Virus record (IMG/VR): IMGVR_UViG_3300032268_000986
Span: 62,001 to 126,000 of that record
Reading direction: 5' to 3' (one strand)
Length of the DNA: 64,000 nt
In this document: one piece after another, positions 528 to 43,661 of the stretch
Numbering within the stretch: the stretch's first letter is position 1
Layout: each line of letters opens with the position of its first letter
The notes under the pieces: model-generated
Seen by the model: the letters and a program-made list of their open reading frames with translations, nothing else
Told to the model about the DNA's origin: nothing
The model's database searches: none
Translations under genes and position numbers: made by a program

Positions 528-1142
528 ATGTCAAGAATATACATCACTGGCGACAGTTTTTGTGCCTATCGTACAGATCCAGATCAACATTGGCCGGCTA
601 GACTAGCAAAAAATCTTGGACTAACATTAGAGGGTCGCGGCTATCCTGGTCAAGGTTGGTGGCCTTCCTGTCAGGATTTCAATTGGTACATAGGGTCAAG
701 GAAATTTTCAGAAACATCAGTGTTTGTATTTTGCCATACAGACTTAAATCGCCCAATAACCAATAATGAGTATTGCAAATTGGGTCTGACAAAAGAACAG
801 CAAGAGTTTTATTTTAGATATCTCCATGACCCTGCTGTTAACCAATGGTCCGCTAACAAATGGTATCGAGAGATTGCTACATCATTGATCAACAAAACTG
901 TGTTGCATTTGCATTTTGGTAGCAGTAATCAGAGATTGAGATCTCAACTGCCTGGCAAGCATCTAACACCAGAACTTGTGACCATGACATCATGGTTCAG
1001 CAACGGCAACACAGGACTGTTGCAGATGCATGAAGGGTACCCAAACCATTTTACTCCCAAAGTCAATGCCAAATTGGCTGACCTTATAGCTGCCAAATGG
1101 CAGCACAATGTCATTGACATTGCCAAGAGTGAGTTAGAATAA
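528..1142 (+). CDS. Hypothetical SGNH/GDSL-like protein
   Basis: N-terminal ITGDSF and C-terminal NH motif; ATG just after upstream stop. Confidence 0.55.
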   Translation: MSRIYITGDSFCAYRTDPDQHWPARLAKNLGLTLEGRGYPGQGWWPSCQDFNWYIGSRKFSETSVFVFCHTDLNRPITNNEYCKLGLTKEQQEFYFRYLHDPAVNQWSANKWYREIATSLINKTVLHLHFGSSNQRLRSQLPGKHLTPELVTMTSWFSNGNTGLLQMHEGYPNHFTPKVNAKLADLIAAKWQHNVIDIAKSELE

Positions 1143-1175
1143 TAAATATCTTTATTGCAAGGAATAAAGGTATGT

Positions 1176-2219
1176 TCAGAGGTAACTTTCTAGCCCACCG
1201 CGTCGACGAATGTCTTGTGTGCAGCATGAGATGCCACCGTCCCAGAAATAGCTGTGACGCAGTTCTGAGATGATGGGTTCAATGCCGTGTCTGCGACAGT
1301 AGTCAAACACCTGTTTGTTGTAGGCTGAGAAAATCACATGTGATTCGTCCAGCACAAGACAATTGACATCAAACACAGTTTCAGCCACAAAGCCAGTCCA
1401 GTTCTTGAGATAGGTGTTCACAAAGTCAGTGAACTCAGGTGTGGGTGTTTGTCCTTGCACGTACCATGCCCCAGGATTGTTTTCATACTTGAACTTGCCC
1501 ACTTCCATAGCAGCCCAGATTGAACTGTCCCATACCTTGCACACATCCCAGCCCGGGAAGTCGGCAGCAAGGTCCAGATTTACATCATGCTTGCTGCTCA
1601 ACAACACACCGGGTTTTAGGATAGCAAACACAGCATCGCCGTGTCCGTCTGTGATGGCTTCGTGTATGCGATATTCAGCACCCAGCACATTGTCCACGAT
1701 CCAACGTGTTTGATCCGGGCGCAAAAAATCTGAGTTGTCAAAGAACACATCACGACCCACTCGCACAATGCATGATGCCGACGCACCATTTAGGATGCAG
1801 TTCTCATCCCAGCCTGTGGCACCGTGTGGATTGATCACACTGCCCGGCTGTGCTGCTGCATACTCGGCACAGAGTGAATCAAGTTCCTGCATGGGCAACA
1901 CACGCAACAATTTATCGCCCAGTGTGATCTGCCAGTCTCTTGGTGTGAGTGGCGGCAGTGGAGCACCACTGCCGTTTATTTGTCCTTGAATGAATTGATC
2001 ACGATCGGGAAGATCTGGGCGGCGCACCCGAGCACCTGACTGCTCAATGGTGCGTTGCAGGTTGTCCAAGTCTTCGGCAGTTTCGTAAAGAATCTGTTGC
2101 AGTTGATTGCGAACTTGTGGGTTTTCAATAAAGTCAAAATAGTCCGGCGTGTAGGCCTGCCCCACAATGACTTCTTCCAGGGGTTGCCACGATGTGTAGC
2201 TGTTAACAATGTTGCTCAT
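1176..2219 (-). CDS. Amidinotransferase (glycine/inosamine-phosphate amidinotransferase, pentein family)
   Basis: N-terminal VNSYTSWQPLEEVIVG, PRD, GHGD, C-terminal DGGISCCT with catalytic Cys. Confidence 0.85.
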   Translation of the reverse strand: MSNIVNSYTSWQPLEEVIVGQAYTPDYFDFIENPQVRNQLQQILYETAEDLDNLQRTIEQSGARVRRPDLPDRDQFIQGQINGSGAPLPPLTPRDWQITLGDKLLRVLPMQELDSLCAEYAAAQPGSVINPHGATGWDENCILNGASASCIVRVGRDVFFDNSDFLRPDQTRWIVDNVLGAEYRIHEAITDGHGDAVFAILKPGVLLSSKHDVNLDLAADFPGWDVCKVWDSSIWAAMEVGKFKYENNPGAWYVQGQTPTPEFTDFVNTYLKNWTGFVAETVFDVNCLVLDESHVIFSAYNKQVFDYCRRHGIEPIISELRHSYFWDGGISCCTQDIRRRGGLESYL

Positions 2220-3378: not shown

Positions 3379-4450
3379 GCATGCCCAGGAGCTCTTGCCA
3401 TAGTATCTTGGTCAGGCCACCGTTGTAGAAGTGATTGAAATTGTGTTCCACAATTTCAACGCAGGCCTGGTGTATGCGTTGACGTTCTTCAACGCCTAGA
3501 TTTTCTAGATGTTTCAACAACTGAGTGACCTTTTCCACTCGCAGTATGTCATCGGTTTCCAAGTCATAGCTCTCATCAAACACCGAGTCAAATGTGCGGA
3601 ACCCATATTCTCGCATGTAGGCCAGGCTGCCAGCAGGAGCCACCAACACAAACGGCATTTCCATGGCAATGGCCTTGAAGGTCTTTTCTGTGATGTGTGT
3701 GCGGCGTCCAAAGTACACAGTTTCAGTGGGCACGTATAGCAGGCTGTCGGCTGCTTCGTCGAAGTTTGTGAGCCAGCACGATGCCATTTGCTGAGTTTCT
3801 TCGCCGGGAAACAATTTAGGCAATGGCGCTGCCTCAAACACTTGCTCAATGTCGGGATATATGTTATTATACTTACGAGCTATCTCACTGATGTCGACAC
3901 CTTCATAGGTGCAGGTCCTAGGAGCTGATATCCAGTTGTGATCCAGCCCATGTTTGAATACATTATACAAGAACAACACACGATGATCACGCTTGCCGGC
4001 CACAATACGATTGGGACTCATAAAAGTCCGTGTGGGCTGCCGATCCCGTGCTCGAGGAATCAAGAAACTCTTGTCGTAGCCTCGAAACCAATCCTGACAG
4101 GCCCAACCATGATAAAAATAGTAATGTGGTGTCCAACCGTACACCCGACACATTTCTTCCACATGCTCGCCCTTTTCGCTAACTACTACATGACCTGGCG
4201 GTTGAACCCAAATATCATCGTTGCGGCGAATCACATCTTGAAACAACGGTTTGTGCAAGTCCATGTGAACAGGTTCTTGGTCATGCATGAATATATAATC
4301 AATTTCACGCACGTCGTCTCCGCCGTAGTTGAACAAACTTTCAGGATCACTACGTCCCGGGGGATCGCAAAAAAATACTCTAGTGCCCGGAACATGTCGT
4401 TGGATCCAGGGCCAAAATGTGTTGTTGTAAATTTCGTCAATTCTAATCAT
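3359..4450 (-). CDS. Putative glycosyltransferase (GT10-like ITEK motif family)
   Basis: HITEKTFKAI...YGFRTFD...ESYD block. Confidence 0.55.
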   Translation of the reverse strand: MIRIDEIYNNTFWPWIQRHVPGTRVFFCDPPGRSDPESLFNYGGDDVREIDYIFMHDQEPVHMDLHKPLFQDVIRRNDDIWVQPPGHVVVSEKGEHVEEMCRVYGWTPHYYFYHGWACQDWFRGYDKSFLIPRARDRQPTRTFMSPNRIVAGKRDHRVLFLYNVFKHGLDHNWISAPRTCTYEGVDISEIARKYNNIYPDIEQVFEAAPLPKLFPGEETQQMASCWLTNFDEAADSLLYVPTETVYFGRRTHITEKTFKAIAMEMPFVLVAPAGSLAYMREYGFRTFDSVFDESYDLETDDILRVEKVTQLLKHLENLGVEERQRIHQACVEIVEHNFNHFYNGGLTKILWQELLGMLDEFRV

Positions 4451-30005: not shown

Positions 30006-30707
30006 ATGCAAACAATTTTATATATTCTCATTGTAACACACATTACCATTGCATGTGTTACGCTATTTTTACATCGAAGTCAAGCACACCGAGGAGTTGA
30101 GTTTCATCCTGTGGTGAGTCATTTCATGCGATTCTGGCTATGGCTAACGACTGGCATGGTCACTCGCCAATGGGTTGCCGTACACCGCAAGCATCATAGA
30201 TTTACCGAACAGGATGGTGATCCGCACAGTCCACATGTGCATGGTTTTTGGCGTGTGCTGTTCACAGGTGCAGGTCTGTACCACTTGGCCAGCAAGGACT
30301 CGGCCATGGTCACACAATACGGCGCAGGAACACCCGATGACTGGGTAGAGCGCAACATATACTCCAAACACAGCAAACTAGGTATCTTGCTCATGTTGCT
30401 GATAGACATGGTATTGTTTGGTTGGTGGGGGTTGGTGGTATGGGGCATACAAATGATATGGATCCCATTCTGGGCAGCAGGAGTTATCAATGGAATTGGA
30501 CACTGGACCGGATACCGTAATGGTATTACTAAAGATCATAGTCGTAATATTAGTCCACTGGGCATTGTTATTGGTGGCGAAGAACTACACAACAATCACC
30601 ACTTGGATCCAGCAAATCCTCGTCTCAGTCGTCGCTGGTTTGAATTTGATATAGGCTGGGCGTACATACGCCTGTTGAGTGTGCTGAGACTGGCACACAC
30701 GAGATAA
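30006..30707 (+). CDS. Delta-9 fatty acid desaturase
   Basis: His boxes HRSQAH, HRKHH, GEELHNNHH; TM segments. Confidence 0.93.
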   Translation: MQTILYILIVTHITIACVTLFLHRSQAHRGVEFHPVVSHFMRFWLWLTTGMVTRQWVAVHRKHHRFTEQDGDPHSPHVHGFWRVLFTGAGLYHLASKDSAMVTQYGAGTPDDWVERNIYSKHSKLGILLMLLIDMVLFGWWGLVVWGIQMIWIPFWAAGVINGIGHWTGYRNGITKDHSRNISPLGIVIGGEELHNNHHLDPANPRLSRRWFEFDIGWAYIRLLSVLRLAHTR

Positions 30708-32026: not shown

Positions 32027-32497
32027 CTATGCGGCTTGCAGACCTTTGAATCGGTCGGCAGCATAGCTGGCAGCAAATGCATAGGGCTTCACAAACGGAA
32101 TCACGTTGCATGTGCCTTTGATGTAGCCCACGGCCTGCGAAATCACACAGCTTGAGCCATGCATTTCGTCAGGGTTGATGTCCAGGTGAACTTCAACATC
32201 CCGACCTTCCAACACTTCGGCCAGTTTGAGATACAGTTCCGAAACCTTGTAGACTTCGGTCATGAGTCGCATGGCAGGCTTACCGGGTTTTTGATCCCAC
32301 ACCCGTTCACGCTGAACTTCGCCAAAGATTTTGCAACCATTGTTGCCGTTGATGTGAACCACAATGGCCAACACATAATCGGCCCACCACTCATTGTTGA
32401 TCTTGATACGTTCCGAGTCGCATCCAAGATAGATGCGAGTTTCGGGCGTTTGTGCCTCGATAAAAGTCTTGACTTCTTCTAGATTGAGCTTTTTCAT
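32027..32497 (-). CDS. RNase H-like YkuK (DUF458) family protein
   Basis: IYLGCDS, RLMTEV, EVHLDIN, KPYAFAASYAAD. Confidence 0.85.
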   Translation of the reverse strand: MKKLNLEEVKTFIEAQTPETRIYLGCDSERIKINNEWWADYVLAIVVHINGNNGCKIFGEVQRERVWDQKPGKPAMRLMTEVYKVSELYLKLAEVLEGRDVEVHLDINPDEMHGSSCVISQAVGYIKGTCNVIPFVKPYAFAASYAADRFKGLQAA

Positions 32498-34000: not shown

Positions 34001-34089
34001 TGGAGGAAGGCTAGTAGAATCGAACTCTATGCGCTTTCGCACACCTTCTGTTTTCAAGACAGAGTCAGGCCCAGCCTGATTAACCTTCC
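34001..34089 (-). tRNA. tRNA-Ser(TGA), atypical fold
   Basis: TCTGT-CTTGAAA-ACAGA, long variable arm, 5-bp D stem, U73. Confidence 0.75.
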
Positions 34090-34369: not shown

Positions 34370-34444
34370 TGGTACCTGGACACGGTTTCGAACCGCGGAC
34401 CCTCTCGGTGTAAACGAGATGCTCTACCCCTGAGCTATCCAGGC
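34370..34444 (-). tRNA. tRNA-Val(TAC)
   Basis: TCTCG-TTTACAC-CGAGA. Confidence 0.94.
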
Positions 34445-34449
34445 AATCA

Positions 34450-34523
34450 TGGAGCGGGATGGGGGAATCGAACCCCCGACTTTAGCTTGGAAGGCTAAGG
34501 TAATACCATTTTACGAATCCCGC
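34450..34523 (-). tRNA. tRNA-Gly(TCC)
   Basis: TTAGC-CTTCCAA-GCTAA. Confidence 0.94.
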
Positions 34524-34531
34524 ATGTTTGT

Positions 34532-34560
34532 ATTATACAGCCGACAATCGCAGTTGTCAA
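34532..34560 (-). promoter_or_regulatory. Consensus sigma70 promoter TTGACA-N17-TATAAT inside tRNA array
   Basis: Perfect hexamers and 17-nt spacer; the same at 35497-35525 and 47247-47275. Confidence 0.85.
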
Positions 34561-34567
34561 CATTATC

Positions 34568-34642
34568 TGGTGGATGTAAGTAGATTCGAACTACTGACCT
34601 GCCGCGTATGAAGCGGATGCACTACCGCTGTGCTATACATCC
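34568..34642 (-). tRNA. tRNA-Met(CAT), probably elongator
   Basis: CCGC-TTCATAC-GCGG, paired 1:72. Confidence 0.85.
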
Positions 34643-34647
34643 AAAAT

Positions 34648-34722
34648 TGGGGTGTCGTATGAGAATCGAACTCATGACAGCGGAATCACAACCCGCGGTT
34701 TTGCCACTAAACTAACGTCACC
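34648..34722 (-). tRNA. tRNA-His(GTG)
   Basis: GTG anticodon, G-1:C73. Confidence 0.92.
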
Positions 34723-34842
34723 ATATAGAAACACTTTCAATATCAGTTCCTTGCTGGCACAAAGAACCTTTCGCCTCTGCCAGGAGACCGAACATTGGCC
34801 GCGCTCATTGGCGGTTACTGTCCGTCAAAAATGTTTTTATAT
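34723..34842 (-). ncRNA. Candidate kissing-loop ncRNA
   Basis: Terminal AT-rich stem; two hairpin loops CTGGCA and TGCCAG are exact complements. Confidence 0.6.
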
Positions 34843-34915
34843 GGTAGGGGCACAGAGAATCGAACTCTGATTAATAGGTTAAAAGCCTACTACTTTGCCG
34901 TTAAGTTATACCCCC
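34842..34915 (-). tRNA. tRNA-Lys(TTT)
   Basis: TAGG-CTTTTAA-CCTA. Confidence 0.92.
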
Positions 34916-34918
34916 ATA

Positions 34919-34993
34919 TGGTCCCTCCGGTGAGATTTGAACTCACACTTCTCGGATTAAGAGTCCGGTATGCTACCGTAACATCTCAGAGGG
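34919..34993 (-). tRNA. tRNA-Lys(CTT), atypical body (A8/U14)
   Basis: CGGA-CTCTTAA-TCCG, CCA end. Confidence 0.8.
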
Positions 34994-35054
34994 ATGGATC
35001 GTAAAGAATTGTCTTTCACGTGCCATCCCTGACCATACGGGGTCAAGAATGACA

Positions 35055-35075
35055 CTAACGTTTGGCACGTTTCAT
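35055..35075 (-). CDS. Mini-ORF MKRAKR with strong SD
   Basis: AAGGAGA-acgac-ATG AAA CGT GCC AAA CGT TAG. Confidence 0.55.
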   Translation of the reverse strand: MKRAKR

Positions 35076-35098
35076 GTCGTTCTCCTTGTTTAAAAAAT

Positions 35099-35175
35099 TG
35101 GTGCCGCGTGAGAGATTCGAACTCCCCGCCCCTGCGTTCGTAGCACAGTGCTCTATCCAAATGAGCTAACGCGAC
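35099..35175 (-). tRNA. tRNA-Arg(ACG)
   Basis: CTGTG-CTACGAA-CGCAG. Confidence 0.93.
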
Positions 35176-35232
35176 CTAGAAAAGAATAGCCCAGGGACCT
35201 AACTCGTCAAAGGAGAGTATGGACTATGTTTG

Positions 35233-35307
35233 TGGTGCCCCGGGGGTGAATCGAACACCCGACCTCGGATTACAAAACCGATGTTTTACCACTAGAACTA
35301 ACGGGGC
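35233..35307 (-). tRNA. tRNA-Thr(TGT)
   Basis: TGT anticodon cloverleaf. Confidence 0.92.
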
Positions 35308-35314
35308 ATGTTGT

Positions 35315-35404
35315 TGGCGGTGCGACTGAGACTCGAACTCAGAAAGCGGCTTTCACCACTCGACGGATTAGCAATCCGCTCCAATACCATTATGGGACCG
35401 CACC
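35315..35404 (-). tRNA. tRNA-Ser(GCT)
   Basis: GCGGA-TTGCTAA-TCCGT, long variable arm, G73. Confidence 0.92.
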
Positions 35405-35412
35405 TCAAAAAT

Positions 35413-35488
35413 TGGCTCCCCAGGGTGGGATCGAACCACCGACACCTTGATTAACAGTCAAGTGCAACTACCGCTGTGCTACTAGGGA
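35413..35488 (-). tRNA. tRNA-Asn(GTT)
   Basis: CTTGA-CTGTTAA-TCAAG. Confidence 0.94.
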
Positions 35489-35533
35489 ATAATACAATTA
35501 TATAGTCAACAGGTGTTGCTGTCAACTAAAACT

Positions 35534-35608
35534 TGGTGCCGCCACATGGGATCGAACCATGGACCTACGCCTTATCAAGACGGTGCTCTACCACTGAGCT
35601 ATGGAGGC
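35534..35608 (-). tRNA. tRNA-Ile(GAT)
   Basis: CGTC-TTGATAA-GGCG. Confidence 0.9.
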
Positions 35609-35616
35609 ATAAAAAC

Positions 35617-35690
35617 TGGCACGGGAACTAGGGATCGAACCTAGGACGACAGAGTCAAAGTCTGTTGTGTTACCTCTACACCATTCCCGA
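35617..35690 (-). tRNA. tRNA-Gln(TTG)
   Basis: ACAGA-CTTTGAC-TCTGT. Confidence 0.92.
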
Positions 35691-35698
35691 ACAAAACT

Positions 35699-35773
35699 TG
35701 GTGGACCGTGGGAGAATCGAACTCCCGCCCGAGCCGTGCAAAAGCCCTGTGCTACCACTATCACTAACAGCCC
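35699..35773 (-). tRNA. tRNA-Ala(TGC)
   Basis: G3:U70, TGC anticodon. Confidence 0.92.
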
Positions 35774-38980: not shown

Positions 38981-40057
38981 TCAGAGATCCAACAACACAT
39001 GATGCTCGCTCACGCTGCCGATGTAGTCACACCGAACTTGGCTCTGGTTGAACCAACCAGGGTGCTGGTGTTGCAATAGGTCACAGTAGGCTTCAAACTT
39101 TGCCAATGTGGTTTGACCCTGGGAACTCAGCGCACAGTTATTGATCAACAGCAGTTCCTTGCGGTCAAATTGCCAGTCATGTTGATGTGACACTGTGCCA
39201 TTGATTCTTGGAAACCCCCACTTTTTATCCAGGCAGTTTCCTGGTGTGGGGAACCCCAAGGCAGCTTTGATGTCAAGCCCCTGCACTCCCTGTTGCGCAA
39301 GATCATGTAGGCCGTATGCATACGCAAACGCTAGGTTAGGGTTGCGTTGGTCACAGAAAAAGTGAATCATGCGAGGAGTCATGAAATTCAAATTGAACCG
39401 GTTGTCCATCCAGTAAAATTTGTTGCCATCTAACACTGGCATGGCAGCACCACCAACATTGACATAATTATCTTGTTGTAGATGTGGATAACACTCAATG
39501 GCCTGCAACGGGTTAGTGGTGCATGGGCGCAGTGTTTTGTGTCGCAACCACCGATGTTCTACATCTTCCATGTACCAAGCATAGTGCTCGGGCAAGATAT
39601 CATAGTACACCACTTGAGCTCGACTGCGGTATTGTTGCAGAGTCTTGGCCAGCACGGACCTAAAGGGAAACACATCAATTTCTATATTGACATACTCATC
39701 CACAGCACCAGGGAATCTACGATACACTGCAATTTCATCAACATCTGCCCCAGTTTCTAAAAATGCCATCAGGGCAGCATGACTGTCCATGCCACCGCTG
39801 TACCACAGGCGTATGCGACTGTGATGATCACGTATGAGTTGGGCCTGATCCAAGCACAGTTGCCAAAAAGTTTTTTGCGGTCGTAATCCGGCTAGGCTGT
39901 GGGACCAAACACGAAACCCCGGTGCGGCATGCCCCAGTTCTTGAGCTTTTCTCAGCGCATCAATCTTGCTGTGTCCATGCCATGTGCTCACATGGTAATG
40001 AGGTCCTGTGTAGCCCTGCCCTGGATCAATCTTTTCTGTGACTTTTACTGGTGTCAT
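38981..40057 (-). CDS. PP-loop (adenine nucleotide alpha-hydrolase-like) protein
   Basis: RLWYSGGMDS. Confidence 0.6.
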   Translation of the reverse strand: MTPVKVTEKIDPGQGYTGPHYHVSTWHGHSKIDALRKAQELGHAAPGFRVWSHSLAGLRPQKTFWQLCLDQAQLIRDHHSRIRLWYSGGMDSHAALMAFLETGADVDEIAVYRRFPGAVDEYVNIEIDVFPFRSVLAKTLQQYRSRAQVVYYDILPEHYAWYMEDVEHRWLRHKTLRPCTTNPLQAIECYPHLQQDNYVNVGGAAMPVLDGNKFYWMDNRFNLNFMTPRMIHFFCDQRNPNLAFAYAYGLHDLAQQGVQGLDIKAALGFPTPGNCLDKKWGFPRINGTVSHQHDWQFDRKELLLINNCALSSQGQTTLAKFEAYCDLLQHQHPGWFNQSQVRCDYIGSVSEHHVLLDL

Positions 40058-41355
40058 GAGTATAGTTGAATCAATCGATTCGTTATGCCATTGAGTTGAT
40101 TTTCTAACAGCAGCACCAGCACCAAGGGCATGAAATCCACTCGACGAGCTGTAATCCAGCCCACTGCACCACTGGCTGCAAACACCAGCATGTAGTACAG
40201 AGTCTGATCGCTACGCCAGCCCTGATACATCACAGTGGCAGTCAACAGCACAATCAACACTGATACTATGGCATTGTAGTACTGTTGGAACCAGCTCAGT
40301 AATTGTTTTACCACTGACGAGCACACCCAGGCCACAACAGCACATCCGATCAGTAAACTTGCAGTTACCAGGCCCACCATGTTCCAGTCAAGATTGGTGG
40401 CACGCCACCCATGACTGGCCAAGATATCCAATATCACCAACTCACTGGGCTGTACCGCTAGGCCCAACAACACAAACGGAATCAGGCTTGAAACCTGGCT
40501 GGCATTGTTGGCAGCTTCTGCAGCCGTGAGACGAGACAGACTGTCTGTGAGATGCGGTTGTTTGCGAAATCTTGATTCCACAGAGTGTGCCAAATTGGAT
40601 GTGATGATACCGCCCACGTATGGCACAAGCCCACACACAAATCCCACTGCACTGCCGCGCAGTGCAGATAGCCAGGCAAACGATCTTTGCGTGTGACCAT
40701 TGATGTCAATGGGCATGCCCATGGGGGATTGCTGGTGCTTGATCAACAGCATGGTGGGCACTGCATACACTCCCAGTATCACCGGGGTAATTGGTATGCC
40801 TCCGGCCAAGTACACATTGCCCAGAGTCAAAAAGTCCTGACCAGTCTGCATGTTGTGTCCTACTGCGCCTATAATCCAGCCCAGTGCAATCAACCCAAGA
40901 TTTATCATGGCTCTGTTGCCGGGCCATGCAGTGACAAATGTCAGTGTGACAAACAACAACACTGCCATGACTTCGGTTCTAAACAGCATGGGCCAGGCCT
41001 GTCCTTGGTGCAAGCAAATCAACATTGCGGAGAGACTCGCTGCCATGCCAATCAAGCTGGCTCGGGCAGTGTCTTTCAATGCTTGCTGGATAGCATTGTG
41101 ACCAATAATGATATTGCGTTCACGCAAGGCAGGTGCAGATGTTACTTCACCTAGAGTGCCAAAGCACAGCGCAGCCACTGATCCTGAAAAGTCTCGAGCC
41201 GAAATCATCACAGCGTAAAATGCAATCAACACAGCCGGACTCATCATGTTCAGCATGGGATACAGTATCAACAACATAAACACCGGACCCAGACCAGGCA
41301 TGAGCCCTACCAAGATTCCAATGGCTGGTGCCAACAGCAACAACAGCAGTTCCAT
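40054..41355 (-). CDS. Tripartite tricarboxylate transporter TctA-like permease
   Basis: GILVGLMPGLG, GFVCGLVPYVG, AAEAANNA; polytopic membrane protein. Confidence 0.82.
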   Translation of the reverse strand: MELLLLLLAPAIGILVGLMPGLGPVFMLLILYPMLNMMSPAVLIAFYAVMISARDFSGSVAALCFGTLGEVTSAPALRERNIIIGHNAIQQALKDTARASLIGMAASLSAMLICLHQGQAWPMLFRTEVMAVLLFVTLTFVTAWPGNRAMINLGLIALGWIIGAVGHNMQTGQDFLTLGNVYLAGGIPITPVILGVYAVPTMLLIKHQQSPMGMPIDINGHTQRSFAWLSALRGSAVGFVCGLVPYVGGIITSNLAHSVESRFRKQPHLTDSLSRLTAAEAANNASQVSSLIPFVLLGLAVQPSELVILDILASHGWRATNLDWNMVGLVTASLLIGCAVVAWVCSSVVKQLLSWFQQYYNAIVSVLIVLLTATVMYQGWRSDQTLYYMLVFAASGAVGWITARRVDFMPLVLVLLLENQLNGITNRLIQLYS

Positions 41356-42998: not shown

Positions 42999-43070
42999 TG
43001 TTTTTCCTTATAAAAGTAAGGGCTTTTGACCCTGAGCAATTATATATGCAACTGCATGTTGCAGTCAAGA

Positions 43071-43097
43071 AGAAAGGTCAGATTAACTGACCTTTCT
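43071..43097 (-). terminator. Hairpin at the end of the tmRNA coding piece
   Basis: AGAAAGGTCAG/CTGACCTTTCT. Confidence 0.6.
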
Positions 43098-43500
43098 GGT
43101 GGTTTCTGTTACGAGGTATTTCCTACCCTAAGCAGTGTTTAGGCTGCTAATGCGAACTGTGAGTCGTTTGCGTTTACTTTTTTGCTTGATTAACGGTCAT
43201 CGCCTACCGTGCTGTCCACTCTGTTACTTGTTGCCCTGTCGAAACTATGCAGGCCCATCATAAAGAAACTTCTTCAAATCTAGATGCCAAAAGCACAATA
43301 CGCAAACCGGCATCTGTTTGAATTACTACTCCATTACCCATGGTATAGACAATATCATAGTCTTTGCCAATTGTTAGTTCCTTATGCACAGCTTTAACAT
43401 CAGGTAATGATTTAAGTATCATAAACTTCCTTATGGTGGACCTGGGGGGATTCGCACCCCCGTCCAGAACACTGTTCTCATCACTTCATACAGCAATAAC
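43098..43500 (-). ncRNA. ssrA: Circularly permuted (two-piece) tmRNA, tag ANDSQFALAA
   Basis: Acceptor piece ending CAGGTCCACCA (43434) precedes 5' piece GGGCCTG...TTTCGAC (starts 43256); G3:U70; tag frame 43139-43171; outer ends approximate. Confidence 0.92.
43258..43422 (-). CDS. 54-aa ORF inside the tmRNA intervening segment
   Basis: SD AAGGA; MILKSLPDVKAVHKELTIGKDYDIVYTMGNGVVIQTDAGLRIVLLASRFEEVSL. Confidence 0.6.
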   Translation of the reverse strand: MILKSLPDVKAVHKELTIGKDYDIVYTMGNGVVIQTDAGLRIVLLASRFEEVSL

Positions 43501-43502
43501 TT

Positions 43503-43661
43503 TTAGATCTGCACCACGGTCCATTTGGTTGTAAATGGTTTGCCTTCGGCCTTGTGTTTCAGTATCTTCGCAAACTCTTTTTCACGGAGTTTGGCAATGG
43601 TTTCTGTATCGTGGTCGAAGCAAGCCTTGTACAAACGAGAAACCAATTTCTTTTGTTTCAT
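43503..43661 (-). CDS. 52-aa basic hypothetical protein
   Basis: SD aaggagg; [14 protein letters not shown]... Confidence 0.6.

What the first reader, a model, noticed from the sequence alone, without database searches (positions are those of the whole stretch)
34994..35090. MKRAKR mini-ORF with switchable structure between Arg and Lys tRNA genes
A strong SD (AAGGAGA) drives ATG AAA CGT GCC AAA CGT TAG. The AAA and CGT codons are read by the neighbouring tRNA-Lys(TTT) and tRNA-Arg(ACG). The downstream strand UGGCACGU can pair either with ACGUGCCA inside the ORF (8 bp) or, via AUGGCA, with UGUCAU just after the stop, extending the CUUGACC/GGUCAGG hairpin; its loop CGUA may also pair with UACG near the tRNA-Lys 5' end. 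Inference: a ribosome-operated switch affecting processing or stability of the Lys tRNAs.
Basis: partly seen in the sequence, partly recalled or inferred. Interest (0 to 1): 0.7.

Follow-up and report, generated by a model that had tools for sequence, protein, structure and literature searches.

The report
Translated leader switch before phage tRNA-Lys
The six-codon MKRAKR reading frame is real: it is one copy of a conserved, apparently translated leader found in about 190 distinct sequence variants from freshwater phage and metagenome contigs, always just upstream of the phage's lysine tRNA genes, and its RNA can fold two mutually exclusive ways, one of which buries the tRNA's 5' end, so it looks like an amino-acid-operon attenuator rebuilt to control a tRNA.

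Summary
On the minus strand, an AAGGAGA Shine-Dalgarno (SD) site, ATG AAA CGT GCC AAA CGT TAG and a 15-bp hairpin fill the spacer before tRNA-Lys(CUU).

- **Conservation.** It is far from chance. A hairpin-only search, which did not ask for the ORF, and a later metagenome scan gave 188 distinct homologues.
- **Shared features.** Every one parsed has an ATG mini-ORF of 6-9 codons, and 100 of 101 aligned have an SD. AAA (Lys) always sits two codons before the stop. In the ORF-blind set the stop is TAG in 112 of 113, and its G is the first base of the hairpin.
- **Context.** tRNA-Lys(CUU) then tRNA-Lys(UUU) follow.
- **Two folds.** Covariation supports the hairpin (P1). It also supports a rival helix between P1's 3' arm and the last leader bases plus tRNA bases 1-3.
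- **Modelling.** A ribosome at the start favours P1 and an intact acceptor stem. A ribosome at the stop favours the rival helix.
- **Known families.** There is no Rfam family, no cultured-phage match and no paper.
- **Best reading.** This is a ribosome-operated, Lys-codon-sensing switch on tRNA-Lys maturation. That mechanism is inferred, not shown.

The parts
35183..35210 (-). Promoter-like site TTGACG-16-TATTCT upstream of tRNA-Arg(ACG). Probable start of the transcription unit that carries the leader in this phage.
   Evidence: 9 of 12 matches. Conserved in L002. In relatives, consensus TTGACA-17-TATAAT promoters sit directly upstream of the leader.
35099..35175 (-). tRNA-Arg(ACG). The upstream neighbour here only; not part of the conserved module.
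   Evidence: The upstream neighbour varies among homologues.
35081..35087 (-). Shine-Dalgarno AAGGAGA, 5 nt before the ATG.
   Evidence: An SD core is present in 100 of 101 aligned homologues.
35055..35075 (-). Mini-ORF ATG AAA CGT GCC AAA CGT TAG (MKRAKR). Lys2 AAA is 35072-35070, the invariant Lys(-2) AAA is 35063-35061, and the TAG stop is 35057-35055.
   Evidence: In homologues: ATG 101/101, AAA at -2 101/101, TAG 100/101, lengths 21/24/27/30 nt. 33 different peptides in the pooled set.
35074..35083 (-). seg0: AGAACGACAU (3' part of the SD through AU of the start codon), complementary to seg1. A possible translation-start sequestering helix.
   Evidence: Seen in the full-length MFE. 78.8% of cells paired in the family, but covariation is marginal: inconclusive.
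35041..35055 (-). seg1: 5' arm of hairpin P1 (GUGUCAUUCUUGACC), beginning with the G of the TAG stop.
   Evidence: P1 89.7% paired, 6 pairs with changes on both sides.
35035..35040 (-). P1 loop CCGUAU, nearly invariant across the family.
   Evidence: In tRNA-Lys(UUU)-type leaders the loop plus upper 3' arm pairs with the leader/tRNA junction.
35020..35034 (-). 3' arm of P1 (GGUCAGGGAUGGCAC). It contains seg2 AGGGAUGG (35030-35023), which can pair with either seg1 or seg3.
   Evidence: Alignment column 93 covaries with both column 64 (seg1) and column 132 (seg3).
35001..35019 (-). P2 small hairpin, enclosed by the seg2:seg3 helix. Duplicated in some relatives without loss of seg3 complementarity.
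   Evidence: 3 of 4 pairs with changes on both sides. Long-spacer variants.
34990..34997 (-). seg3: CCAU (last 4 leader bases) plus CCCU (tRNA-Lys(CUU) bases 1-4), complementary to seg2. It spans the RNase P cleavage site.
34919..34993 (-). tRNA-Lys(CUU), with an unusual C1-G72, C2-G71 start shared by all homologues listed.
34842..34915 (-). tRNA-Lys(UUU), 3 nt downstream. The second gene of the conserved Lys cassette.
   Evidence: The order leader > Lys(CUU) > Lys(UUU) holds in 99 of 109 homologues.

Best explanation
This is a conserved 5' leader of a phage 'lysine cassette' (leader, tRNA-Lys(CUU), tRNA-Lys(UUU)). It appears to work like a leader-peptide attenuator, except that its output is access to the tRNA's 5' end rather than transcription termination.

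Shown by comparison:
- A strong SD and ATG drive a 6-9 codon frame. Its only invariant features are Met1, a Lys AAA codon two codons before the stop, and (in all but one ORF-blind homologue) a TAG stop whose G is the first base of hairpin P1.
- The 3' arm of P1 (seg2) is complementary to two partners. One is the 5' arm (seg1). The other is seg3: the last about 4 leader bases plus tRNA bases 1-3. Both helices covary.

Inferred:
- A ribosome held at the start of the frame (AUG in the P site, Lys AAA waiting in the A site) covers the initiation region and leaves seg1 free. P1 then forms, seg3 stays single-stranded, the acceptor stem folds, and RNase P can cut. That is the ON state.
- A ribosome that runs to the TAG stop occupies seg1. 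This frees seg2, which pairs with seg3, buries the cleavage site and opens the acceptor stem. That is the OFF state.
- Without any ribosome the RNA is close to bistable, and seg1 may also pair with the initiation region.
- Slow decoding of AAA would therefore favour maturation of the phage's own Lys tRNAs, and ample decoding would hold them back. AAA is read only by tRNA-Lys(UUU), the species that known anticodon nucleases attack.
For: - **Conservation without circularity.** A hairpin-only pattern found more than 119 viral contigs. Of 112 parsed, 112 have an in-frame ATG...TAG; one further homologue, L068, lacks the TAG. Of 115 hits, 109 are followed by tRNA-Lys(CUU), 4 by tRNA-Lys(UUU), and 2 are chance hits.
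- **Coding signature.** SD 100/101, ATG 101/101, frame lengths 21, 24, 27 or 30 nt, Lys(-2) AAA 101/101, TAG 100/101. The same phage uses AAA:AAG at 208:169 and TAG for 1 of 25 stops.
- **Peptide diversity.** 33 peptides in 188 pooled elements.
- **P1+P2.** 87.4% paired, 9 pairs with changes on both sides, covariation 0.184 against 0.113 in shuffles (0/500) and 0.03-0.07 when slid.
- **seg2:seg3.** 77% paired, covariation 0.183 against 0.094 (0/500). Lineage-matched duplexes average -8.5 against -4.6 kcal/mol for mismatched lineages, 0/5000 permutations. RNAalifold, run without seg1, picks this helix with 35 two-sided changes at one pair.
- **Three-way compensation.** Seen in GGATGG, GGTTGG, GGGTGG, GATTGG and GGAAGG lineages.
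- **Independent solution.** Leaders that sit before tRNA-Lys(UUU) use a different 12-bp helix that again covers the junction plus GGG of the tRNA.
- **Ribosome-mask folding of 169 leaders.** Ribosome at the AUG: P1 in 167, acceptor stem intact in 152. Ribosome at the stop: P1 in 0, seg2:seg3 in 159, acceptor stem intact in 35. Free RNA: 107 against 62.
- **Dedicated promoters.** Consensus promoters lie directly upstream of the leader in many relatives.
Against: - Nothing experimental. Ribosome occupancy, RNase P sensitivity and any response to Lys-tRNA supply are untested.
- The folding model ignores tRNA tertiary structure, kinetics and RNase P speed. Because P1 is usually the more stable fold, sequestration may only be transient.
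- The covariation rests on a handful of independent changes. The two counts that are most robust to relatedness (pairs with a two-sided change, further pair types) do not beat shuffles for seg2:seg3.
- Two lineages with C at alignment column 95 compensate in P1 but not in seg3.
- The seg0:seg1 helix is not significantly covarying.
- There are only two Lys codons rather than a run. Lys2 may be there simply because AAA after ATG favours initiation.
- A ribosome with the invariant Lys(-2) codon in the A site gives a mixed prediction: P1 in 100, seg2:seg3 in 69.
- There is no obvious reason why a lytic phage should limit its own tRNA.
- The metatranscriptome contig over the leader could be carried-over DNA.
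Confidence: 0.45

Rival explanations
1. It is a ribosome-operated switch, but it reports general translation activity or the speed of RF1-dependent termination at TAG rather than lysine decoding. The Lys codons would be there for efficient initiation and termination context.
For: - The TAG stop is near-invariant although TAG is rare in this phage.
- The stop/P1 junction is fixed while ORF length varies.
- The clearest modelled contrast is start against stop, not the Lys(-2) position.
Against: - It does not explain why the element is found only before Lys tRNAs.
- It does not explain why Lys(-2) is AAA in 101/101 while Lys2 tolerates AAG.
Confidence: 0.2
2. It is a processing or stability module with no sensing. 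P1, P2 and the junction helix would guide or time nuclease cuts in the polycistronic tRNA precursor. The mini-ORF would merely recruit ribosomes to protect the RNA, or finish translation coming from upstream genes.
For: - In many relatives a 42-aa ORF ends between the SD and the ATG, which suggests translational coupling.
- The leader lies inside a multi-tRNA transcript in the window.
- An RNA-library contig ends at the foot of P2.
Against: - Many copies have their own consensus promoter and no upstream ORF.
- The exact stop/P1 junction, the invariant AAA and the mutually exclusive helices are not needed for simple protection.
Confidence: 0.12
3. The product matters: either the basic hexapeptide itself, or a bar-like minigene effect in which peptidyl-tRNA drop-off ties up particular tRNAs.
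For: It is a very short ORF with a strong SD, the class known to promote drop-off (background: PMC2490762, found). The peptides are basic.
Against: - 33 peptides of 6-9 residues share only Met1 and Lys(-2).
- The last sense codon, the one that matters for minigene toxicity, varies among Arg, Leu, Pro, Gln, Ser, Cys, Met and Ile.
- The covarying RNA helices and the tRNA-Lys linkage go unexplained.
Confidence: 0.06
4. It is a T-box-like direct tRNA sensor. AAA would pair with the anticodon of tRNA-Lys(UUU), and the invariant UGGU at the top of P1 would pair with the uncharged ACCA end.
For: UGGUC is invariant and complementary to GACCA. The masked MFE pairs it with the cis tRNA 3' end. AAA is invariant.
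Against: - No T-box or any other Rfam hit, even at E = 10.
- No Stem I or specifier loop.
- No terminator.
- The conserved SD, ATG, reading frame and stop would be unexplained.
- No covariation can be tested, because both partners are invariant.
Confidence: 0.04

Closest known systems
Leader-peptide transcription attenuators (trp, his, pheST operons)
   Same: A short translated leader ORF carries codons cognate to the regulated product. A chain of overlapping RNA segments has a pairing set by where the ribosome sits. The three-state logic is the same: stalled early = ON, ribosome at the stop = OFF, no ribosome = mostly OFF.
   Different: - The regulated genes are tRNAs, not an mRNA.
- The OFF helix has no U-tract and is not a terminator. 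It covers the RNase P site and tRNA bases 1-3.
- There are only two sensor codons.
- It is phage-borne.
Translational attenuation leaders of erm and cat resistance genes
   Same: A ribosome positioned on a very short leader ORF remodels a downstream hairpin without any terminator.
   Different: Those leaders expose an SD of a downstream protein gene and respond to a drug-stalled ribosome. Here the released segment pairs with a pre-tRNA 5' end, and no drug or arrest peptide is implied because the peptide is variable.
T-box riboswitches
   Same: A cis-RNA links tRNA status to expression of a gene of the same amino-acid system. There is a UGGN-type motif complementary to the tRNA 3' end.
   Different: No Rfam match, no Stem I, no terminator or antiterminator. 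The ribosome and a reading frame are involved.
Lambda bar and other toxic minigenes
   Same: An ORF of only a few codons behind a strong SD, in a phage.
   Different: The last sense codon is not conserved. The element is tied to structured RNA and to tRNA-Lys genes.
Phage tRNAs as counter-defence against tRNA-Lys nucleases (PrrC, PARIS AriB)
   Same: The cassette supplies phage Lys tRNAs, and the leader's invariant codon AAA is read only by tRNA-Lys(UUU), the usual nuclease target (background: PMC11464382, PMC10264068, PMC12409363, found).
   Different: Those papers describe the tRNAs themselves. I read only their titles and abstracts in the search listing, and none mentions a translated regulatory leader. 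Any link to defence here is inference.

Membership tests
Leader-peptide (ribosome-mediated) attenuator | Short ORF with a ribosome-binding site that is actually translated | tested here: inconclusive
   The comparative signature is strong: SD 100/101, ATG 101/101, frame-preserving length changes, synonymous and non-synonymous variation. No ribosome data exist.
Leader-peptide (ribosome-mediated) attenuator | Regulatory codons cognate to the regulated amino-acid system | tested here: met
   Lys AAA at -2 in 101/101 and Lys at codon 2 in 187 of 188. The element is found only before tRNA-Lys genes. There are only two codons, not a run.
Leader-peptide (ribosome-mediated) attenuator | Mutually exclusive helices sharing one strand | tested here: met
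   seg2 covaries with seg1 and with seg3.
Leader-peptide (ribosome-mediated) attenuator | Output helix is an intrinsic terminator (GC hairpin plus U-tract) | tested here: not met
   No terminator-like site on the minus strand at 34400-35700. The OFF helix is followed by the tRNA body. It therefore works like an attenuator but is not a classical member.
T-box riboswitch (RF00230) | Match to the covariance model; Stem I specifier loop; antiterminator bulge | tested here: not met
   No hit at E <= 1 over 20 kb or at E <= 10 over the leader.
Any described RNA family (Rfam 15) | Score at or near a family's gathering threshold | tested here: not met
   The best leader hits score 8-20 bits against thresholds of 40-96.
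bar-type toxic minigene | Conserved last sense codon whose tRNA is sequestered; toxicity when peptidyl-tRNA hydrolase is limiting | tested here: not met
   The last codon varies over at least 8 amino acids. Toxicity is not testable here.
erm/cat-type translational attenuator | Leader hairpin hides the SD of a downstream protein gene | tested here: not met
   The downstream genes are tRNAs. No downstream ORF is conserved.

The most novel reading that the evidence does not exclude
This would be the first known case in which a ribosome translating a leader peptide gates maturation of a tRNA. It would be a direct feedback from decoding capacity for Lys AAA codons to the supply of Lys tRNAs. Phages might use it as a sensor that releases their own tRNA-Lys when the host's is depleted, for instance by anticodon nucleases.
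Probability: 0.35. Interest if true: 0.92.

Novelty: new variant of a known kind. Interest (0 to 1): 0.85.

Why it matters
- tRNA genes are generally taken to be controlled at the promoter and by general processing enzymes. A gene-specific, translation-coupled switch on a tRNA precursor would add a new layer of control and a new output for the attenuator design: RNase P access instead of termination.
- It would give a concrete, testable handle on why phages carry tRNAs and how they deploy them, at a time when tRNA-Lys cleavage is emerging as a common antiviral strategy.
- Practically, it defines a new, abundant RNA family for annotating freshwater phage genomes.
- It also offers a compact (about 100 nt) part that couples translation to RNA processing.

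Tried and rejected
84.8% paired through sequence conservation alone, with zero compensatory changes, equal to shuffles. Rejected as a conserved helix.
- **Loop CGUA:UACG pseudoknot.** 64% paired, no covariation. Not supported for the main type.
- **Link to tRNA-Arg.** The upstream neighbour is variable. Rejected.
- **Intrinsic terminator in the leader.** None found.
- **Rfam.** Nothing, including ribozymes and T-box.
- **Cultured phages (INPHARED, blastn).** Only tRNA matches, none over the leader.
- **185,579 species genomes.** One true hit, on a 1.5-kb contig of a freshwater MAG, so it is not a host element.
- **Literature.** 'MKRAKR' returned nothing. Searches for leader peptides or small ORFs combined with tRNA operons, RNase P or phage tRNA clusters returned nothing relevant.
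- **PHROGs** on the 42-aa upstream ORF and on a 55-aa ORF in the cluster: no family.
- **Metatranscriptomes.** These are assembled contigs only. One exact 203-nt contig spans tRNA-Arg plus the leader, but DNA carry-over cannot be excluded.
- **seg0:seg1 (start-site sequestration).** Suggestive but not significant.
- **Other mini-ORF leaders before other tRNAs in the window.** None.

Full report
**1. Where the finding lies.**
The window is part of a 342,865-bp IMG/VR virus record assembled from freshwater or lake samples. It carries a minus-strand cluster of 33 tRNA genes plus a permuted tmRNA. The finding occupies the 105-nt spacer 35098-34994 between tRNA-Arg(ACG) and tRNA-Lys(CUU). tRNA-Lys(UUU) follows 3 nt later.

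**2.
Reading the minus strand gives:
- AAGGAGA at 35087-35081.
- ATG AAA CGT GCC AAA CGT TAG at 35075-35055.
- A 15-bp hairpin, P1, whose first base is the G of the stop: 35055-35041 paired with 35034-20, loop CCGUAU.
- A small hairpin, P2, at 35019-35001.
- GAUCCAU directly before the tRNA.

The spacer folds at -31.8 kcal/mol, z = -3.65. It is the only SD+ATG mini-ORF in the tRNA spacers of this window and the only copy in the genome.

**3. It is a family, and the ORF is part of it.**
- The exact ORF occurs in one near-identical contig, L002. There, three of four changes in the P1 5' arm keep pairing.
- A degenerate ORF pattern found 61 viral contigs. In all but one unrelated hit (a few are cut off at a locus end) they also shared the downstream hairpin and a tRNA with a CUCUUAA anticodon loop, which the pattern had not asked for.
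- To avoid circularity I searched with the hairpin loop and 3' arm only.
- After removing duplicates and two chance hits, 112 of 112 parsed elements have an in-frame ATG...TAG ending exactly at P1. One extra copy, L068, has lost the TAG.
- Of 115 unique hits, the next gene is tRNA-Lys(CUU) in 109 and tRNA-Lys(UUU) in 4.
- A metagenome scan added 120 loci. Its pattern required TAGTGTC, so it says nothing further about the stop codon. Pooled, there are 188 distinct elements, 182 before tRNA-Lys(CUU) and 6 before tRNA-Lys(UUU), with 33 different peptides.
- Among 185,579 species genomes only one 1.5-kb MAG contig carries it. No cultured phage does, Rfam has nothing, and I found no paper.

**4. 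Signature of translation.**
In the 101-sequence structural alignment A3:
- SD core in 100, ATG in 101.
- Codon 2 is AAA in 92 and AAG in 9.
- The codon two before the stop is AAA in 101.
- The stop is TAG in 100.
- ATG-to-stop lengths are 21, 24, 27 or 30 nt.
- The middle of the frame and the last sense codon vary freely: Ala by all four codons, and Arg, Leu, Pro, Gln or Ser as the last residue.

The phage itself uses AAA:AAG at 208:169 and ends 1 of 25 long ORFs with TAG. The invariant AAA and TAG are therefore selected, not compositional.

The upstream neighbour is anything: eighteen different tRNA species nearest upstream, consensus TTGACA-17-TATAAT promoters, or a 42-aa ORF whose stop lies between the SD and the ATG. 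The order leader > Lys(CUU) > Lys(UUU) holds in 99 of 109.

**5. Two competing helices.**
- P1 and P2 are supported: 87.4% of cells paired, nine pairs with changes on both sides, covariation 0.184 against 0.113 in shuffles (0/500) and 0.03-0.07 when the partner is slid.
- The 3' arm of P1 is also complementary to the last four leader bases plus tRNA bases 1-3 or 1-4. In the window that is AGGGAUGG with CCAU|CCCU.
- This second helix is 77% paired, with covariation 0.183 against 0.094 (0/500). Its central base pair changes together with the P1 partner: column 93 with columns 64 and 132.
- Lineages show matched triples: GGATGG/TCATCC/CCAT|CC, GGTTGG/TCAACC/CCAA|CC, GATTGG/TCAATC/CCAAT|C, and GGAAGG/TCTTCC/CTTT|CC.
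- At class level, matched duplexes average -8.5 and mismatched -4.6 kcal/mol, 0 of 5000 permutations.
- RNAalifold, given sequences without seg1, predicts exactly this helix.
- The complementarity survives a 30-nt insertion (a second P2) in some relatives.
- Leaders that precede tRNA-Lys(UUU), which starts GGG instead of CC, lack this helix. Instead they pair the invariant loop and upper arm, CCCGUAUGGUC, 12 for 12 with the last nine leader bases plus GGG. That is an independent route to the same burial of the junction.

Caveats:
- The number of independent changes is small.
- The relatedness-robust counts for seg2:seg3 do not exceed shuffles.
- Two lineages compensate only in P1.

**6. What was not confirmed.**
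Across the family it shows no compensation and is interrupted by codon insertions.
- The loop CGUA:UACG contact shows no covariation.
- A helix between the initiation region (AGAACGACAU) and seg1 appears in the full-length MFE and is 78.8% paired across the family. Its covariation is marginal, so I leave it open.

**7. Mechanism (inference).**
I folded 169 distinct leader + tRNA sequences with about 28 nt masked to mimic a ribosome. This rests on established footprint and toeprint geometry, which I take from general knowledge rather than a tool.

| Ribosome position | P1 forms | seg2:seg3 forms | Acceptor stem intact |
|---|---|---|---|
| AUG in P site (Lys2 codon, usually AAA, in A site) | 167 | 2 | 152 |
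| At the stop | 0 | 159 | 35 |
| Lys(-2) AAA in A site | 100 | 69 | 96 |
| None (free RNA) | 107 | 62 | 99 |

- The pattern matches the trp attenuator: stalled early = ON, at the stop = OFF, untranslated = largely OFF. The OFF helix is a 5'-end sequestrator rather than a terminator, and none is present.
- Because the invariant codons are Lys AAA and the controlled genes are the two Lys tRNAs, the most economical reading is feedback from AAA-decoding capacity to maturation of phage tRNA-Lys.
- A link to host nucleases that cut tRNA-Lys(UUU) (papers found) is attractive but speculative.
- The masked folds also pair the invariant UGGUC with the tRNA's GACCA end. I cannot test this because neither side varies.

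**8. Expression.**
Lake metatranscriptome assemblies contain an exact 203-nt contig covering 35203-35001, which is tRNA-Arg plus the leader and ends at the foot of P2. Another covers both Lys tRNAs. These are contigs, not reads, and DNA carry-over is not excluded, so I count this as compatible, not as proof.

**9. Verdict.**
- The sequence observation is confirmed.
- The element is an undescribed, widespread phage RNA family that works like a leader-peptide attenuator but fails the terminator criterion of that family.
- I rate the element as real at above 0.9, a ribosome-dependent conformational switch at about 0.7, and the full Lys-sensing and RNase P-gating mechanism at about 0.45.

Noticed in passing
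window 34005-34089 (-): A tRNA gene missed by ARAGORN. Rfam scores it as tRNA-Sec at 48 bits (threshold 47). By eye it has a long variable arm and a CUUGAAA anticodon loop, which would make it tRNA-Ser(UGA), the 34th tRNA of the cluster.
   Followed up: partly
window 35525-35497 and 34560-34532 (-): Two perfect TTGACA-17-TATAAT promoters sit in 45-nt spacers inside the tRNA cluster. The cluster is therefore split into several transcription units.
   Followed up: partly
window 34841-34722 (-); also L002 about 470-640 and many loci: A 120-nt spacer after tRNA-Lys(UUU) folds into a three-way junction closed by a long stem (-39.1 kcal/mol, z = -3.44). It has no Rfam match. Similar about 100-nt elements with conserved closing strands (AAACAAAAGCACA...UGUGCCUUUGUUUGGU) recur next to tRNAs in related contigs, twice in tandem in L002.
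   Followed up: partly
L040:7262-7345 (-), L008, L023, L010, L061 and others; a comparable closing stem plus U-run at window 38221-38149 (-): Directly upstream of many leaders is an element closed by AGGAUGC...GCAUCCU and followed by a U-run. Inside it is a 5-bp stem with loop CUUUUAA, identical to the tRNA-Lys(UUU) anticodon loop. It could be a terminator with a large loop or an armless tRNA-Lys mimic. The outer stem is predicted but the fold is not significant.
   Followed up: partly
L005:2575-2703 (+) and about 20 other loci: A conserved 42-aa basic, Trp-rich ORF (MANVKKGNLT...NINKGE) ends with its stop codon between the SD and the ATG of the mini-ORF, which suggests translational coupling. 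No PHROGs family.
   Followed up: partly
L128:3615-3734 and 4023-4142; L213:493-531 and 980-1018: Some contigs carry two leader copies. In L128 one precedes tRNA-Lys(UUU) and the other tRNA-Lys(CUU).
   Followed up: no
window 43048-43526 (-): A phage-encoded permuted (two-piece) tmRNA with tag ANDSQFALAA. This type occurs in alpha- and beta-proteobacteria and cyanobacteria, which is a hint about the host.
   Followed up: no
L002 about 1010-2025 (-) compared with window 35232-35176: The close relative has a roughly 1-kb insertion with an ORF between tRNA-Thr and the promoter-like site before tRNA-Arg. The window has only 57 nt there.
   Followed up: no
window 40054-41355 (-), 30006-30707 (+), 32027-32497 (-): Genes beside or within the tRNA region match a TctA-family transporter, a fatty-acid desaturase and an RNase H-like protein.
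   Followed up: no
window 34266-34099 (-): A 55-aa ORF with its own SD lies between tRNA-Pro(UGG) and the tRNA-Ser-like gene. No PHROGs family.
   Followed up: partly
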